DNA of 64,000 nt from Salpingoeca rosetta (taxonomy: Eukaryota; Protista; Choanoflagellata): the NCBI GenBank assembly GCA_033442325.1, contig JAWQFM010000003.1, forward strand, positions 1,961,490 to 2,025,489. Reading direction: 5' to 3'. Within the stretch, counting starts at the first letter, position 1, and every line of letters starts with the position of its first letter. The position numbers were made by a program, and so were the translations under genes. Shown here piece after piece: positions 36,251 to 46,283 of this stretch. The notes under the pieces were generated by a model. The model did not search any database. It saw only the letters and a program-made list of their open reading frames with translations, and had not been told where the DNA came from.

Positions 36251-38771
36251 TTACCTGCGGCTCCTGCTGTTGCTGCGGGCACGCGTGCGCTTCGACCGCT
36301 TCGCACTTGGCTCCTCGTCAGACACATCATCCTTGTTGGAGGTGTTCTTCTTGCCCTTTGAGCGCTGGCGCGTGGCGGGCGGAGAGAACATGTCGTGCTC
36401 AGCAGGTGCAGGCGTGGTCTCGCGATCGCCCTGCGTCTGTCCCTTGTTTGCGCGCCCACGGGTTGCCTTGGTGCGTGTCTCCTCTTCCTCTTGCTCTTCC
36501 CCCTCTTGTTCTTGCTCTTGCTCTTGCTCTTGCTCTTCCTCTTGCTCTTGCTCTTCCTCTTCATTGTCGCTGTTGTGGTCGACGATGGCCAGCAAGCGCT
36601 CCTGCAACTCCGCCTTGCGCCCGCGCACTTCTGCACCAACCTCGCTCAGCACGGCACGAAGCTCCGCCACCTTCATGGCCATGATCTGCTCGCGTGACAG
36701 CTCAAGGTCAACGTCCTCTTCTTCCTCTTCTTCCTCTTCCTCCTCTTCCTCCTTTTCCTCCTCATCATCATCACTGCCTTCTGCCTCGGCTTCATCTTCC
36801 TCAACAGCGTTGCCCTGTGAAGTCTCAGCGTCACTGGCCTCGTTTGCCGTTTCCTGGGCTCCAGCTGCATGTTCCTGCTCTTCCTCTGCCTCCTCCTCCT
36901 CCTCCTCTGCGTGCTGTTCGTTCTGATTTGCCTCAGCGCTCGCATCGTTCGCGGCAGAGGCGCGGATGGCATCGAGCAGGCGCTCCTGTAGCTGCTTCTT
37001 GCGGCCAGCAGCAGACACGCCAATCTCAGACAGCGCATGTCGCAGATCGTTCATCTTCATGCTCATCACGTCATCCTCTGTCAGCCCAAGCTTGGACGCC
37101 GCAGTGTCGTTGCCGCCCTCCTCCTCCTCCTCCTCCTCATTGTCTTCCTCCTCCTCTTCCGCATCAGCAGCAACAGCAGCAGCAGCATCGTCATGTCCTT
37201 CATCTGCTGATTCGTCCTCGTCCTCCTCCTCTTGCATGGCAGCGCCAGTATCCTTGTCCTCCTGCTCCTGTCCAACCTCCTGCTCCTCATCTTCCTCGTA
37301 TTCCTCATCTTCCTCCTCTTCCTCCTCTTCCTCGGTGCGCTCAGGGATGACAGAGAGCTTGCGCTTCTCAAAACTCAGCTTCGGGCCCCGCAACTCGTCC
37401 TCGTCGCGAGGGCTGGGCTCCAGGGCAATCGACAGCCGCGACTGCAGCTCCGCCTTGCGGCCGCTGGTGGACAGCCCGCGTGCCTCCAGCTCGGCCCGCA
37501 GCTCCTTGCACGTCATCGACTTGACGTCCAGGCGACTGGGCTCCGGGTGGCGCGGTGCGAGCTGCTTGCGCTCCATCTTCTTCTGGCTGGACCGCGTCAG
37601 ATACGCGCGCTGCGGTGGCGACGCCGGCTCAGGCGTCCGCATGCCATCCTCTGCTTCATCCTCAGCCTCATCATCACCCGCCTGTTCTGCGTTGGGCTGC
37701 GCCTTGACGGGCATGCTTGGGGCAGACTCCGTGCCTTCCTGTGCCTGTTCATCGTCGTCGTCAGCTTTCGCCTCATCCTGCATTGCTGCGGCCTTGGCAC
37801 CATGCTCGTCATCCTCTGCCTGCTCCCGCATTTGCTCGGCTTCGGCGGCAGTTGGCATGGTTTCCTCGGCGGTGGCTGTTGTCTCCTCGGATGTCTGGTC
37901 ATCGACCTCGGCAGAAGGTGCAGCAGCAGCATCCTGCTCTTGCCCCTCCTCAGCCGTTTCCTCTCCGACTGCGCCCTTGTCCTCGTCGTGCTCTTGTGCC
38001 ACTTGCGCATTGGGCTCTTCCTCAGCAACACCATCACCACCTTCCTCTTCCTCAAGGACTTCTTCCTCTTCCTCCTCATCCTCATCCTCATCCATCTCTT
38101 CATCTTCTTGCTCCTCAGCCTCGTCCTCCTCCATCTCCTCCTCAGCGTCTTCCTCGACTTCCTCGACTTCCTCGACAACCTCCACCACCATTTCATCCTT
38201 ATCCTGCACAGCCTCCTGCTCCTTCTCCTCCTCATCTTCTTGCTTCTCTTGCTCCTCTTCCTTAACCTCTTCCACAACCTTCTCCACAACCTCTTCTTCC
38301 TCGTCGGCAGCTGCTGCCACGGGCTTCAGTGCAACGCCGCGGCGAACAGCCTCCCGTGTGGGCGTGTTCAGGCTCTTCTTGTACAGAGTCTTGAGCGCAA
38401 TCCCTTGCTGCACCTCCCGCCGCACCGGTGACGGCAGCACGTGCTGTGCCTCGTTGGCGTCTTCGCGTGCCTGTGCGACAATCTCCTCCTGCAGGTGTGC
38501 GGGGAGAGCGCGGGCGCGGCTGAGGCGGTAGCGGCGCTCGCGGCGCTTCAGCAGCCGCTGCGCAGCGTTGACGGAGATGGTCACCATCTTTGGGCACTGG
38601 TTCAGGGCCCGGCGGATCGGGTGGCACAGCGAGGGGGCATATGGCACAAAGCGAAGCCCGCGGGGGCGAGAGCGCTTGCGCTTCACATTCGCAGCAGCAG
38701 CCTTTGCAATGGCCAGTGCCATGGCCTGCTGGTCTTCCTCGTCCTCCTCGTCTTGCTCTGCTTCGTCATCC

Positions 38772-38808
<37 letters not shown>

Positions 38809-40104
38809 CTGCCGCCACATTGGCGCTGTTGTCTTCCCCCATGGGCATCGAAACGTCTTCCTGCTCAGCCTCAGCGGCACTCGCATCGCTGCCTTCCTCC
38901 TCGTCCGCAGAATCGTCTTTTCCCTCTTCCTCTTCTTCCTCCACATCTTCGTCATCGTGCATCACAACAGCAACCTCCTCGACTTGTACGGCCTCGGTCA
39001 CTTCCTCATCTTCGTCGTGTTCATCCGCAGGTGTAGCCTTCACCTTCTTCAGAGTCACGCCCTCCTTGATCTGCTCGCGCACAGGCGTGTTGAGTGCCTT
39101 CTTGTACACCTTGTTCAGCTCCTTGCCTTCCTTCAGCTGCTGACGCACGGGTGTCGCAAGGCCCTTTTTGTACACCTTGTTCAGCTCCTTGCCCGCTTTG
39201 ATCTGAGCACGCACGGGTGTTGCCAGGCCTTTCTTGTACACCTTGTTGAGGTTGGCGCCGCCTTGGATTTGCTGGCGGAGAGGGGTCGCGAGTGCCTTCT
39301 TCTTGGCCTGCGTAGTCTCTGTGTCTTGGGTAACAGTCTTCTTCAGAGTCACGCCCTCCTTGATCTGTTCACGCACAGGCGTGTTGAGTGCCTTCTTGTA
39401 CACCTTGTTCAGCTCCTTGCCTTCCTTCAGCTGCTGACGCACGGGTGTCGCAAGGCCCTTCTTGTACACCTTGTGCAGCTCCTTGCCCGCTTTGATCTGG
39501 GCACGGAGAGGCGTCGCGAGTGCCTTCTTCTTGGCCTGCTTGTCCGTGTCTTGGGTAACAGTCTTCTTCAGAGCCACGCCCACCTTGATCTGCTCGCGCA
39601 CAGGCGTGTTGAGTGCCTTCTTGTACACCTTGTTCAGCTCCTTGCCTTCCTTCAGCTGCTGACGCACGGGTGTCGCAAGGCCCTTTTTGTACACCTTGTT
39701 CAGCTCCTTGCCCGCTTTGATCTCCTTGCGAAGCGGCGTCGACGCTGCCTTCTTGTACACCTTGTTAAGGTTGGCGCCGCCTTGGATTTGCTGGCGGAGA
39801 GGAGTGGCAAGCGCCTTCTTCTTGGCCTGCTTGTTCTCCTGCTGCGTGGCTGCAGGCTTTGGGCTGTTGAGGTCAATCAAGTCCTGGTCAGACTCTGTGG
39901 AGGCGTCAAGGTTCAGCTTTGGCGGTGTCTGCTGCATCTTCTTGGGCGTGGTCGCCCTGGACTTCTTCTTGCGCTGCGATGTTGGGCGCGAGCCAACCGT
40001 CTCACCCGCCTCATCCGACTCTGGAATCCTCTACACACCACAACCACGGACCAACATGCATGTAAGTACCGGGTGCATGCACACATGTGGGCGTGTGTGT
40101 GTGT

Positions 40105-40147
<43 letters not shown>

Positions 40148-41823
40148 TGTGTGTGTGTGTGTGTTTGTGTTTGTGTGTGTGTGTGTGTTTGTGTTTGTGT
40201 GTGTGTGTGTGTTTGTGTTTGTGTGTGTGTGTGTGTTTGTTTGTGCGCCGTGTGCGCGAGCAGAGGTGTGCCACCGTCTCAACGTGACACTTCCACGGAC
40301 ACACAAGCAATTGGGGGCAAGCGACGACACCTTGAGGATGGGCACGAGGGCGCTCCTGCGCTTGACAGAGACGGGCCGCGGTGATGCACCACGCTTCAGC
40401 GGCGTGCTGGGCGGCAAGTCCTTGTCGAAGATCTCTGGAGACAGCGGGTCGGAGAACCCCACGCTACGACGACGTGGTGCGAGCGCAGGGGAGGCGCCCG
40501 TGCTGCCCCGCTTGCTGTCATTGGCGGTCGCAGCAGCCGTTGCTGCCTTGTTCTTCTTCTTGAGGGAGCTCTTTGGTAGCTTTGTGGCAGCAGGGGATAC
40601 CGTGTTGCTGGGTGTCTTTGAGCGGGGGCCGCCGGCACCAGCGTTGCGGTCCTGCAGTGGAGTGGAACGGCGTGAGCTCTTCTTGCTTGCAGACGCGGGG
40701 TTGGACTGTTCATGTGGGATGTTGTGCGGTTATGTGTGTGTATGTGTGTGTGTAGGTGGGTGTGTGTGGGCGTGCGCGCAGGGGTGTTGGTGCATTTGGG
40801 CATGTGAACAACGGCAACAAGGGAAATATGAACAACAGCCAGAAGCAAGCATGGTGTGGGTGCTGTGCGTATGTGTGCGCACACATCCCAAAAAAAAAAA
40901 ACACTGCTACAGACAGTGGCACCACGCAAAGCCACAGCTCCAAGCAAGTAACCCAAACGCACACAAACACACGCACACAACACACGCACAGATGCACATA
41001 AACAGACGCACATGCACACACGCGCACACACGCACACACGCACACAAACACATGCAGACACGCGCCGTCACACACGTCAACGCACCTTCTTTGGGGTGGA
41101 GAGGATACGCTCGTTGGGAAAGTGGAAGCGAAAGCGGCGCTCGGCAATGGTGATGACATCGCCGTCCTTGAGCTCCCGTGACTTGTCAACAACAGCGCCG
41201 TTCACCAGCGTCGCATTGTAGCCAGAGTCTGCTGCGATGACAAGCTACAGCAGCAATGAAGGAAACAGTTTGCCACAGGGGGTCCACATGTGAGTTTGGG
41301 TGCGAGAAATGAGGCTGAGGACAGCAAAGGTAGTGGTGGTGGTGCAACAATGTCACGAAGCAGGAACGTGCATGCTGGAGTCAAAGCATGACACTGCGGT
41401 GCCTTGAGCACGGGCGGAGCAAGCGAGCGTACCTTGCCGCTGTCTCCCTTGCGGATGCTGGCGTGGTGCTGTGAGACTTTTGGGTTTTGAATGCGAATGT
41501 CACATTGCAAGTCCCTGCATAACAGTACACGTGTGTGCGTGTGTGTGTGCGTGTGTGTGCGTGTGTGTGTGTGTGCGTGTGTGTGAGTCGACATGCAACG
41601 GAGGAACAATAAGGAACAAGGCACAACTCCTGCACAAGCTATCTGCACGTCGAGCCAGTGTGTGTGTTTTTTTTTGTGTGTGTGTGTGTGAGCACCCTCA
41701 GGCCGCTTAGCAAGTGACAGACCTGCCAAAGGAGCAGGAGTCTTTGGTGATGTTGTAGATGGAGCCATCCTTTCCCGTCTTCTTCTTGATCACCACAAGG
41801 TGACCAACGACGTTGGAAGCCAT
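36251..41823 (-). CDS. Ki-67-like protein (~1498 aa): FHA + PP1-docking motif + tandem 22-aa repeats + acidic region + 3 SAP domains
   Basis: Exons 41723-41823, 41433-41514, 41086-41244, 40331-40705 and 36251-40030 join in frame at GT/AG. FHA: HLVVIKKKTGKDGSIYNITKDSCSFGRDLQCDIRIQNPKVSQHH..NATLVNGAVVDKSRELKDGDVITIAERRFRF. PP1 motif: RRRSVGFSDPLSPEIFDKDLPPSTPLKRGASP. SAP pattern: MxxxELRxxL...G....GRKAELQxRL, three times. Confidence 0.85.
39040..39817 (-). repeat. Coding tandem repeat: 11 units of 66 bp (22 aa), KxLxTP(L/V)RxQIKxGxxL(N/K)KV
   Basis: Read directly from the translation. Two units are extended by a TVTQD..QAKK spacer. Confidence 0.95.
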
Positions 41824-42370: not shown

Positions 42371-42433
<63 letters not shown>

Positions 42434-42518
42434 GCGTGTGCGTGTGTGTGTGTGGTGATGGCTACACGCTCTGCGTCGTGCTGTTTACTGACAAGGAGAC
42501 CAACACACTGTCACGTAG

Positions 42519-46283
<3,765 letters not shown>

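What the first reader, a model, noticed from the sequence alone, without database searches (positions are those of the whole stretch)
40378..40474. Intact Ki-67/RepoMan PP1-docking motif (RVxF plus KiR-SLiM)
Seen: RRRSVGFSDPLSPEIFDKDLPPSTPLKRGASP. Known (recalled): Ki-67 RRVSFGGHLRPELFDENLPPNTPLKRGEAP and RepoMan/CDCA2 RVTFGEDLSPEVFDESLPANTPLRKGGTP. This extended motif is considered diagnostic of those two PP1 regulators. One difference: the Aurora-B-targeted S/T inside RV[S/T]F is Gly here, with a Ser just before the Val (RRRS), while the CDK SP/TP sites are retained. Inference: PP1 targeting at mitotic exit by this module predates animals.
Basis: partly seen in the sequence, partly recalled or inferred. 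Interest (0 to 1): 0.8.

Follow-up and report, generated by a model that had tools for sequence, protein, structure and literature searches.

The report
Choanoflagellate Ki-67 PP1-docking motif
This stretch encodes the phosphatase-docking peptide of a choanoflagellate version of the cell-proliferation protein Ki-67; it is real, expressed and strongly conserved, but the same module is already catalogued in other choanoflagellates and in early-diverging fungi, so it is an expected family member, not a discovery.

Summary
The 32-residue peptide is on the minus strand (40474..40379), inside exon 4 of a five-exon, 1,498-codon gene (36251-41823). It passes Pfam PP1_bind (42.9 bits, cutoff 27). Its only matches in the PDB are the PP1-bound peptides of human Ki-67 (5J28) and RepoMan (5INB/5IOH). 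A spliced contig from a public run joins exons 2 to 5 at exactly the predicted GT-AG borders, so the exon is transcribed in this frame. The host protein is Ki-67-like: a Ki-67-type FHA domain, then PP1_bind, then lysine-rich repeats, then an acidic tail with three SAP domains. Its nearest relative is from the choanoflagellate Barroeca monosierra.

"Predates animals" is correct but too cautious. FHA + PP1_bind proteins also occur in Basidiobolus, Mortierella and three chytrids, so the module is at least as old as opisthokonts.

It is not new. A June 2026 preprint lists a Monosiga Ki-67 homologue with RSVTF, Pfam already tags these proteins, and NCBI names three of the fungal ones Ki-67.

Gly at the RVxF x position is unique among 161 family motifs. 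Ser before Val is common (33 of 161). All three RepoMan-type CDK sites are kept.

PP1 binding and a mitotic-exit role remain inferred. The scan noted this stretch and gene before, on this same DNA only.

The parts
40378..40474 (-). The flagged stretch: residues 192-223 of the gene model, RRRSVGF...KRGASP (codons occupy 40379-40474)
   Evidence: Pfam PP1_bind; PDB matches to Ki-67 and RepoMan.
40454..40468 (-). RVxF-type motif R194-S195-V196-G197-F198. It fits [RK]-x(0,1)-[VI]-{P}-[FW]. Gly is at the x position and Ser195 directly precedes Val.
   Evidence: Regex hit (consensus as quoted). Aligns without gaps to Ki-67 R-V-S-F. Gly at x occurs in 1 of 161 motifs and Ser before Val in 33 of 161.
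40430..40435 (-). PhiPhi motif equivalent, E205-I206 (Ki-67 E515-L516, RepoMan E402-V403)
   Evidence: Alignment; motif definition.
40379..40429 (-). KiR-SLiM equivalent, F207-P223 (FDKDLPPSTPLKRGASP). It keeps the two hydrophobic anchors F207 (=F517 of Ki-67) and P213 (=P523).
   Evidence: It differs from the published general pattern at one position (N to S), where the family is split S57/N56.
40382..40441 (-). Span holding three S/T-P sites inside the motif: S203 (40439-40441), T215 (40403-40405) and S222 (40382-40384). They are the positional equivalents of RepoMan CDK1 sites S400, T412 and T419.
   Evidence: Positions; RepoMan sites from Kumar 2016 mapped through the alignment. All three are present in 102 of 161 family motifs.
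40331..40705 (-). Exon 4 (125 codons), which carries the whole PP1_bind region
   Evidence: Gene model. Both borders are confirmed by a spliced contig: joints 40030|40331 and 40705|41086.
36251..41823 (-). Whole CDS of the Ki-67-like gene, 1,498 codons plus stop. Exons: 41823-41723, 41514-41433, 41244-41086, 40705-40331, 40030-36251. All introns are GT-AG.
   Evidence: no internal stop. Junctions of exons 2-5 are confirmed. Exon 1 and the ATG are inferred from colinearity with the Barroeca N-terminus.
41086..41823 (-). Ki-67-type FHA domain, residues 1 to about 107, split over exons 1-3
   Evidence: Exon 3 alone hits the PDB Ki-67 FHA 2AFF/1R21 at 3.5e-6, and the next matches are noise. The Barroeca orthologue, 69% identical over this domain, hits Ki-67 FHA at 7e-18, with the next FHA at 3e-5.
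39038..39847 (-). About 11 lysine-rich tandem repeats of roughly 24 residues, each with a TP site (context only)
   Evidence: Translation. The same kind of repeat aligns at 35-39% identity to sponge and jellyfish Ki-67-like proteins. Pfam WH2 scores only 18.6 bits, below its 23.1 cutoff.
36584..37528 (-). Region with three SAP domains (about 37433-37528, 36962-37075 and 36584-36697) in the acidic C-terminal half (context only)
   Evidence: Pfam SAP at 104.7 bits in three stretches. The same layout occurs in the Barroeca and Mylnosiga orthologues.

Best explanation
The stretch encodes the PP1-docking module (RVxF, then PhiPhi, then KiR-SLiM; Pfam PP1_bind) of the choanoflagellate orthologue of Ki-67. 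By homology with the solved human Ki-67:PP1 and RepoMan:PP1 complexes, I infer the following. Val196 and Phe198 insert into the RVxF pocket of the PP1 catalytic subunit. Glu205-Ile206 occupy the PhiPhi pocket. Phe207 to Pro223 fold back as a hairpin over the KiR surface, anchored by Phe207 and Pro213. This would tether PP1 to a chromatin-associated scaffold made of an FHA domain, a basic repeat region and three SAP domains. Docking is probably switched off in early mitosis by phosphorylation inside the motif and restored at mitotic exit. The candidate sites are the three S/T-P positions S203, T215 and S222, equivalent to the CDK1 sites of RepoMan, and possibly Ser195, which lies in an RRRS-V context. 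What is shown: the sequence, its family membership, its expression and splicing, its strong conservation, and its phylogenetic spread. What is inferred: PP1 binding, the kinase control and the mitotic timing.
For: Family membership: Pfam PP1_bind at 42.9 bits against a cutoff of 27. The only PDB matches are the PP1-bound peptides of Ki-67 and RepoMan, aligned without gaps across RVxF, PhiPhi and KiR-SLiM (motif definitions).
Expression: one 836-nt contig in run X8 joins 40030|40331, 40705|41086 and 41244|41433. Each skipped stretch runs CT..AC on the plus strand (GT..AG on the minus strand), and the contig has no mismatches. One raw RNA-seq read in X22 shows the first of these joints.
Host protein: a Ki-67-type FHA domain, with PP1_bind about 90 residues downstream and 30 S/T-P sites.
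Conservation: the 32 residues are 81% (Barroeca), 72% (Mylnosiga), 59% (sponge) and 59% (jellyfish) identical without gaps. The preceding linker is 14-29% identical and, in three of the four comparisons, gapped. In every comparison the motif is better conserved than the folded FHA domain.
All near-invariant family positions are kept: V, F, L-S-P-E, F-D, L-P-P, T-P, K-R-G, S-P.
Orthologues with the same module occur in choanoflagellates, sponges, cnidarians, vertebrates and five fungi.
Against: There is no biochemical or cell-biological evidence for this protein. Gly at the RVxF x position is unique among 161 distinct family motifs, and its effect on affinity is unknown. The residue before Val is Ser rather than the usual Arg, although 33 of 161 motifs share this. 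I could not examine this organism's PP1, so its Arg20, Arg74, Tyr78 and Gln294 equivalents are unchecked. The two raw RNA-seq runs cover the 5' exons only thinly, and exon 1 is not covered by the spliced contig. The protein as a whole is acidic (pI 4.66) and ends in SAP domains. It lacks the vertebrate Ki-67 repeats, and I saw no counterpart of the LR domain, so its cellular role may differ from that of human Ki-67.
Confidence: 0.8

Rival explanations
1. The motif is an inherited sequence that no longer docks PP1 efficiently in this species. Gly replaces the usual Ser/Thr/Arg/His at the RVxF x position and Ser replaces the basic residue before Val, so the RVxF anchor is weakened and the region serves another partner or none.
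For: Gly at x is found in 1 of 161 motifs. Kumar et al. show that changes at the x position can lower affinity 25-30 fold, although they tested a phosphomimetic Asp.
Against: The motif still fits the [RK]-x(0,1)-[VI]-{P}-[FW] consensus. Every other conserved position is intact. The block is 72-81% identical to other choanoflagellates while its flanks are 14-35% identical, which argues for ongoing selection. The x position is variable in the family (S, T, R, H, C, A, Q, Y, I).
Confidence: 0.1
2. The gene is the counterpart of RepoMan/CDCA2 rather than of Ki-67.
For: All three RepoMan CDK1 sites (S400, T412, T419) have equivalents here. The human Ki-67 peptide has Arg at the first and Ala at the third.
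Against: The protein starts with an FHA domain whose best PDB match is Ki-67. The representatives that resemble the named fish CDCA2 (P0048), and P0052, whose motif matches the human RepoMan chain, have no FHA domain. The three CDK sites are the majority state of the whole family (102 of 161), so they are probably ancestral rather than specific to RepoMan.
Confidence: 0.04
3. The resemblance is a chance or low-complexity match in a Pro/Ser/Lys-rich disordered region.
For: The surrounding protein is compositionally biased and repetitive.
Against: E-values of 5.7e-11 (Pfam) and 1.2e-7 (PDB). The alignment is ungapped over 33-44 residues. The motif sits in the same place downstream of the same FHA type in orthologues. 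It is an island of conservation.
Confidence: 0.01

Closest known systems
Human Ki-67 PP1-interaction domain (residues 496-536; PDB 5J28; Kumar et al. 2016, PMC5005033)
   Same: Colinear, ungapped RVxF, PhiPhi and KiR-SLiM. It keeps V, F, E-Phi, F-D, L-P-P, T-P-L-K-R-G and the final S/T-P context. It lies downstream of a Ki-67-type FHA domain.
   Different: RSVGF replaces RRVSF, so there is no Aurora-B-type Ser at x and a Ser sits before Val. It has LSPE where Ki-67 has LRPE and ASP where Ki-67 has EAP, which adds two more S/T-P sites. The position of the published N is Ser. The host protein has no Ki-67 repeats (PF08065), is acidic overall, and ends in three SAP domains.
Human RepoMan/CDCA2 PP1-interaction domain (residues 383-423; PDB 5INB, 5IOH)
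   Same: The same module. All three CDK1-regulated sites (S400, T412, T419) have equivalents here: S203, T215 and S222.
   Different: RepoMan's RVxF is RVTF, with Thr at the x position where this protein has Gly. The RepoMan-type family representatives have no FHA domain, whereas this protein starts with one. P213 here corresponds to A410 in RepoMan.
Monosiga brevicollis Ki-67 homologue (bioRxiv 10.64898/2026.06.18.733134, Table 1)
   Same: A choanoflagellate protein of 1,274 aa with an N-terminal FHA domain, repeats, and a PP1 motif RSVTF at 174-178, which has the same Ser-before-Val form.
   Different: Thr rather than Gly at x. The preprint scores only the short RVxF regex and never mentions the KiR-SLiM or SAP domains. 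Its reported pI is 9.83, against 4.66 here.
Barroeca monosierra EP01147_P008160 (P0002) and Mylnosiga fluctuans EP00047_P024096 (P0005), unannotated EukProt proteins
   Same: The same layout of FHA, PP1_bind, repeats and SAP domains. P0002 is 48% identical over the first 382 residues. The motif is 81% and 72% identical. Both have Ser before Val.
   Different: Ala rather than Gly at x. Mylnosiga has Ile in place of the RVxF Phe.
Fungal 'Ki-67' proteins: Basidiobolus ranarum KAK9764643.1 (P0013), Podochytrium, Chytriomyces, Cladochytrium, Mortierella
   Same: FHA plus PP1_bind above Pfam's cutoff in all five. The FHA domains of the two tested (Basidiobolus, Chytriomyces) have human Ki-67 as best PDB match.
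   Different: They have the canonical [RK][RK]V[ST]F form. Basidiobolus carries two tandem copies, and the second reads RRVRF. In three of the five the KiR part is degenerate: the 'D' and the 'LPP' are altered in Podochytrium, Chytriomyces and Mortierella. Pfam found no SAP domain in any of them.

Membership tests
Pfam PP1_bind (PF15276): the Ki-67/RepoMan PP1-interaction domain | Score above the curated gathering threshold of the family HMM | tested here: met
   42.9 bits against a cutoff of 27, E=5.7e-11, profile positions 2-33.
Pfam PP1_bind (PF15276): the Ki-67/RepoMan PP1-interaction domain | An RVxF-type anchor, [RK]-x(0,1)-[VI]-{P}-[FW] | tested here: met
   RSVGF at residues 194-198 is the only such match in the 1,498-aa protein (consensus as quoted).
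Pfam PP1_bind (PF15276): the Ki-67/RepoMan PP1-interaction domain | A PhiPhi motif and the two KiR hydrophobic anchors (F517 and P523 of Ki-67) in register | tested here: met
   E205-I206, F207 and P213 align without gaps to E515-L516, F517 and P523.
Pfam PP1_bind (PF15276): the Ki-67/RepoMan PP1-interaction domain | Literal match to the 2016 'general' KiR-SLiM pattern FDxxLP(P/A)N(T/S)PL(R/K)(R/K)Gx(T/S)P. I do not treat this as defining, because only 24 of 161 family motifs match it. | tested here: not met
   There is one mismatch, N to S at residue 214. At that column the family has S in 57 motifs and N in 56. With that column free, the pattern matches.
Pfam PP1_bind (PF15276): the Ki-67/RepoMan PP1-interaction domain | Physical 1:1 binding to the PP1 catalytic subunit | not testable with these tools
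   This needs ITC, a pull-down or a co-structure. No multimer prediction tool was available.
Pfam PP1_bind (PF15276): the Ki-67/RepoMan PP1-interaction domain | An Aurora-B-phosphorylatable Ser/Thr at the RVxF x position (a regulatory feature, not a defining one) | tested here: not met
   Gly197 is at x, the only Gly among 161 motifs; 47 of 161 motifs lack Ser/Thr there. Ser195, in an RRRS-V context, is a possible substitute. That is my inference.
Ki-67 orthologue group | An N-terminal FHA domain of the Ki-67 subtype | tested here: met
   The window's exon 3 hits 2AFF/1R21 at 3.5e-6. The Barroeca orthologue hits them at 7e-18, with the next FHA at 3e-5. Window residues 3-105 are 44% identical to the sponge protein that NCBI names Ki-67-like.
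Ki-67 orthologue group | [quoted passage not shown] | tested here: met
   The motif is at 192-223 of 1,498 aa. There are about 11 repeats, 30 S/T-P sites and 17 full [ST]Px[KR] sites. The criteria are those listed in the preprint.
Ki-67 orthologue group | Ki-67 repeats (Pfam PF08065) | tested here: not met
   There is no PF08065 hit. Among the relatives found, PF08065 appears only in vertebrate proteins, so it does not define the wider group.
Ki-67 orthologue group | A highly basic protein with a C-terminal chromatin-binding (LR) region | tested here: inconclusive
   The overall pI is 4.66, but the N-terminal 570 residues have pI 10.46. The C-terminal half has three SAP domains instead. The preprint also accepts acidic homologues, such as Daphnia at pI 4.7.
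Ki-67 orthologue group | Coats mitotic chromosomes and recruits PP1 at anaphase | not testable with these tools
   This needs live imaging of a tagged protein.
RepoMan / CDCA2 | PP1_bind in a protein without an FHA domain | tested here: not met
   An FHA domain is present. The representatives that resemble a named fish CDCA2 lack one.

The most novel reading that the evidence does not exclude
The full RVxF-PhiPhi-KiR docking module, with its three CDK sites, was already present on a Ki-67-like FHA protein in the opisthokont ancestor, and RepoMan is a later FHA-less offshoot. In the choanoflagellate and sponge lineages the kinase-sensitive serine of the RVxF moved from the x position to the residue before Val, giving [RK][RK]-S-V, which is an Aurora/PKA-type context. 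This species has Gly at x and so keeps only that shifted site. That would make it a natural separation-of-function variant for asking how PP1 release is timed in a genetically tractable relative of animals.
Probability: 0.3. Interest if true: 0.45.

Novelty: new member of a known kind. Interest (0 to 1): 0.3.

Why it matters
Until recently Ki-67 was regarded as vertebrate-specific, and the KiR-SLiM was described as a PP1 surface used by just two human regulators. This locus shows an intact, expressed copy of the whole docking module in a choanoflagellate. Following it outward shows the FHA + PP1_bind pair in three phyla of early-diverging fungi. That puts the Ki-67:PP1 pairing at or before the opisthokont ancestor, which also argues against it being an adaptation specific to animal cell division. 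The practical value is modest. It points to a choanoflagellate model, probably Salpingoeca rosetta, in which the RVxF, KiR and CDK-site contributions could be tested genetically. It also shows that the 2016 consensus pattern is too narrow, matching only 24 of 161 motifs. The central evolutionary point is already implied by Pfam and NCBI annotation and by a 2026 preprint, so this refines the picture without changing it.

Tried and rejected
1. Plus-strand reading of the coordinates gives nothing related.

2. My first exon 3 acceptor (41231) broke the reading frame. The acceptor at 41244 restores it, and the spliced contig later confirmed that border.

3. Pfam on the three FHA exons separately was nearly blind: exon 3 scored 19.7 bits, just under the FHA cutoff, and exons 1-2 scored nothing. 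I used PDB searches and the Barroeca orthologue instead.

4. The word-index search restricted to the 66-residue motif region of P0002 returned only the query. The index is too coarse for a short linear motif, so I used the exhaustive profile search.

5. The ESM Atlas look-up of the motif exon scored below the useful range (0.77-0.79). The look-up with the FHA + PP1_bind half returned Ki-67 clusters but no useful taxa.

6. I considered amphibian-host contamination for the Basidiobolus protein and rejected it. Its 15-kb contig carries six compact genes, the protein is Ser/Thr/Asn-rich with two tandem motifs, and four other fungi have the same domain pair.

7. The high-depth 'joints' inside exon 5, such as 37231 to 38067, carry inserted letters and fall in acidic low-complexity repeats. 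I treat them as cross-mapping from other genes, not as introns.

8. Neither protein search returned the window's own product, so I cannot say how, or whether, this gene is annotated publicly.

9. I could not name the organisms of several metagenome-only or run-only family members (P0006, P0040, P0082, P0113 and others).

Full report
**Observation**

Reverse-complement translation of 40378-40474 gives RRRSVGFSDPLSPEIFDKDLPPSTPLKRGASP, and the plus strand gives nothing related. The match is not chance:
- The exon containing it scores 42.9 bits (E=5.7e-11) on Pfam PP1_bind, PF15276, whose curated cutoff is 27.
- A search of every distinct PDB sequence returns three matches only: the Ki-67 peptide of 5J28 (E=1.2e-7) and the RepoMan/CDCA2 peptides of 5IOH and 5INB (about 4e-6). 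All align without a gap.
- A version of the published KiR-SLiM pattern relaxed at one position occurs once in the six-frame translation of the 64-kb window, at this site.

**Gene and expression**

The peptide lies in exon 4 of a five-exon minus-strand gene. The exons are 41823-41723, 41514-41433, 41244-41086, 40705-40331 and 40030-36251. All introns are GT-AG, there is no internal stop, and the product is 1,498 residues. My first guess at the exon 3 acceptor broke the frame.

I laid four public runs on the gene. One 836-nt contig in run X8 matched without any mismatch and joined 40030|40331, 40705|41086 and 41244|41433. Each skipped stretch runs CT..AC on the plus strand, which is GT..AG on the minus strand. 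One raw RNA-seq read in X22 shows the first of these joints. These are exactly the model's borders for exons 2 to 5.

Several runs hold about 0.77 of the sampled words. That is close to the exonic share of the stretch (0.80), as expected for mRNA contigs. Exon 1 and the start codon are not covered by the contig. They rest on colinearity with the Barroeca protein. Depth over the 5' exons in the two raw RNA runs is low.

**What the protein is**

- Residues 1 to about 107 form an FHA domain of the Ki-67 subtype. Exon 3 alone finds the human Ki-67 FHA structures 2AFF and 1R21 at 3.5e-6, and everything else is noise.
- The Barroeca orthologue, 69% identical over this domain, finds the same structures at 7e-18. 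The next FHA protein scores 3e-5.
- PP1_bind follows at residues 192-223.
- Next come about 11 lysine-rich repeats of roughly 24 residues, each with a TP site.
- The tail is a long acidic region with three SAP domains (Pfam SAP, 104.7 bits).
- The N-terminal 570 residues are basic (pI 10.46), the remainder is acidic (pI 4.09), and the whole protein has pI 4.66. There are 30 S/T-P sites.

This is the Ki-67 layout as the recent preprint defines it: N-terminal FHA, a PP1 motif downstream, disorder, repeats and CDK sites. It lacks the vertebrate Ki-67 repeats and has SAP domains where vertebrates have the LR region.

**Organism**

- The closest relative found is a Barroeca monosierra protein, P0002. 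It is 48% identical over the first 382 residues and has the same FHA, PP1_bind and triple-SAP layout.
- A Mylnosiga fluctuans protein, P0005, comes next. Both species are choanoflagellates.
- Among the proteins I examined, only these two and one unnamed run-derived protein (P0006) combine PP1_bind with SAP.
- Other follow-up agents on this genome call it Salpingoeca rosetta. I did not verify the species.
- My own evidence supports "choanoflagellate". All 23 runs listed for the stretch, from seven studies between 2011 and 2026, carry a single organism label, as expected for a cultured model organism.

**Residue-by-residue reading**

Using the ungapped alignment and the structural description in Kumar et al. 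2016:
- R194-S195-V196-G197-F198 corresponds to R-R-V-S-F of Ki-67.
- E205-I206 corresponds to the PhiPhi pair E515-L516.
- F207 and P213 correspond to the two hydrophobic anchors F517 and P523.
- T215-P-L-K-R-G and S222-P close the KiR-SLiM.
- The only departure from the published "general" pattern is Ser214 in place of Asn.

To see what is typical, I ran a profile of eight motif regions (A1) against 1.84 billion cluster representatives. It found 645 proteins at E<=0.001 and 182 at E<=1e-10.
- The "N" column is S in 57 motifs and N in 56, and only 24 of 161 motifs match the 2016 pattern literally. The pattern is too narrow; this motif is not aberrant.
- The residue before Val is R in 100, S in 33 and K in 16. 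Ser there is the rule in the choanoflagellates and sponges sampled. Table 1 of the preprint also gives RSVTF for Monosiga.
- The x position is S in 92, T in 22, R in 21 and H in 12. Gly occurs once, in this window only.
- All three positional equivalents of the RepoMan CDK1 sites S400, T412 and T419 are present here as S203, T215 and S222, and in 102 of 161 motifs. The human Ki-67 peptide has only the middle one.

Half of it is a lineage trait (Ser before Val) and half is specific to this species (Gly at x).

**Conservation**

The motif is an island of conservation, as expected of a functional short linear motif.

| Compared with | Motif 192-223 (ungapped) | Preceding linker 108-191 | FHA domain 1-107 |
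|---|---|---|---|
| Barroeca | 81% | 25% | 69% |
| Mylnosiga | 72% | 14% | 41% |
| Corticium (sponge) | 59% | 25% | 46% |
| Sanderia (jellyfish) | 59% | 29% | 42% |

The linker is also gapped in three of the four comparisons. In every comparison the motif is better conserved than the folded FHA domain.

**How old the module is**

The second-best hit of the exhaustive search, P0013, is deposited as "antigen identified by monoclonal antibody Ki-67" of the fungus Basidiobolus ranarum.
- It has an N-terminal FHA domain and two tandem PP1_bind motifs, scoring 87.2 bits.
- Basidiobolus lives in amphibian guts, so I checked for host contamination. Its 15-kb contig carries six compact genes, and the 4.3-kb CDS occupies 4.4 kb. 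That is fungal, not vertebrate, gene density.
- Searching outward from it found FHA + PP1_bind proteins in Podochytrium, Chytriomyces and Cladochytrium (Chytridiomycota) and in Mortierella (Mucoromycota).
- All four pass Pfam's PP1_bind cutoff, at 34.1, 35.6, 36.6 and 29.6 bits.
- The FHA domains of the two fungi I tested, Chytriomyces and Basidiobolus, match human Ki-67 FHA 8-9 orders of magnitude better than any other solved FHA.
- The fungal motifs have the canonical [RK][RK]V[ST]F form. Their KiR parts range from complete (Basidiobolus, Cladochytrium) to partly degenerate.

Barring horizontal transfer, the FHA + PP1_bind pair therefore goes back at least to the opisthokont ancestor. "Predates animals" is right but conservative. 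Family members I could name beyond these are all animals: sponges, cnidarians, flukes, a snail and vertebrates, including a fish CDCA2.

**What was already known**

- Kumar et al. 2016 defined the KiR-SLiM and reported that only Ki-67 and RepoMan carry it in Swiss-Prot.
- A June 2026 preprint (10.64898/2026.06.18.733134) argues against the view that Ki-67 is vertebrate-specific. It lists homologues from Monosiga, Capsaspora, several fungi and others. It scores PP1 binding with the short RVxF regex or, for some species, "Pfam". It never mentions the KiR-SLiM or SAP domains.
- Precomputed Pfam annotations already tag the Barroeca, Mylnosiga and fungal proteins with PF15276, and NCBI names three of the fungal proteins Ki-67.
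- I found no paper connecting Ki-67 specifically with Salpingoeca, and only five papers mention the KiR-SLiM at all.

So this is a further member of a known family in a lineage where the family has already been reported. Two points are, as far as I could search, not stated in print: the extended motif, not just RVxF, is conserved as far out as fungi, and the Ser-before-Val form is typical of choanoflagellates and sponges.

**Mechanism**

Shown: family membership, expression, conservation and phylogenetic spread.

Inferred from the human co-structures: Val196 and Phe198 fill the RVxF pocket, Glu205-Ile206 fill the PhiPhi pocket, and residues 207-223 form the return strand of the hairpin on the KiR surface. 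This would tether PP1 to a scaffold whose SAP domains and basic repeats plausibly bind chromatin.

Inferred from the RepoMan work: phosphorylation of S203, T215 and S222 by CDK1 would block docking until mitotic exit.

My own inference, resting on general knowledge of Aurora consensus sites ([RK]-x-[ST]-hydrophobic): Ser195, in the context RRRS-V, could take over the role of the x-position Ser/Thr that Aurora B phosphorylates in Ki-67 and RepoMan. I could not examine this organism's PP1, so the Arg20-dependent selectivity described for human PP1 gamma remains untested here.

**Verdict**

Function is untested. The novelty is low, a new member of a known kind, and interest is about 0.3.

Noticed in passing
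window 39038-39847 (minus strand): About 11 lysine-rich repeats of roughly 24 residues, of the form ATPxRxQIKxGxxLNKVYKK. The same repeat type aligns at 35-39% identity with sponge (P0001) and jellyfish (P0003) Ki-67-like proteins, and an Aurelia-style EukProt entry (P0004) begins with it. It looks like a conserved repeat of non-bilaterian Ki-67 proteins rather than an actin-binding array.
   Followed up: partly
window 36584-37528 (minus strand): Three SAP domains embedded in a very acidic C-terminal half (pI 4.09). The pairing of SAP with FHA and PP1_bind was seen only in the choanoflagellate proteins P0002 and P0005. P0006, an unnamed protein from a sequencing run that lacks a complete FHA domain, also pairs SAP with PP1_bind. 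The 2026 Ki-67 preprint does not mention this pairing.
   Followed up: partly
window 42600-46000 (plus strand): A multi-exon gene that looks like mitochondrial HSP60/chaperonin, judged by eye from the ORF translations. It is transcribed divergently from the Ki-67-like gene, and the two start codons are roughly 0.8 kb apart, so they may share a bidirectional promoter region.
   Followed up: no
window 40090-40250, 40730-41080, 41540-41700, 42380-42460: Long (GT)n/(CA)n microsatellites fill the introns and the upstream region of this gene. They create many spurious long ORFs on both strands.
   Followed up: no
window 37212-38093 (minus-strand exon 5): Very deep apparent 'joints' and loose ends in the RNA runs, for example 37231 to 38067 with four inserted letters. 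They fall in Glu/Asp-rich low-complexity coding sequence and most likely come from cross-mapping of other acidic-repeat transcripts, not from splicing.
   Followed up: partly
The PDB chain therefore carries Met at the Thr-Pro position equivalent to RepoMan T412. I do not know why.
   Followed up: no
P0013 (Basidiobolus ranarum), residues 371-407 and 432-465; locus L001 654-5082: The fungal Ki-67-like protein carries two tandem, nearly identical full PP1_bind motifs about 60 residues apart. The Anolis Ki-67 (P0019) also has a second, degenerate copy at 166-207 (25.7 bits on my profile).
   Followed up: partly
P0005 (Mylnosiga fluctuans) residue ~160; P0040 residue ~12: Two family members have Ile instead of Phe at the final RVxF position (KSVAI, KSVQI), outside the usual [FW] consensus, while the rest of the motif is intact.
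   Followed up: no
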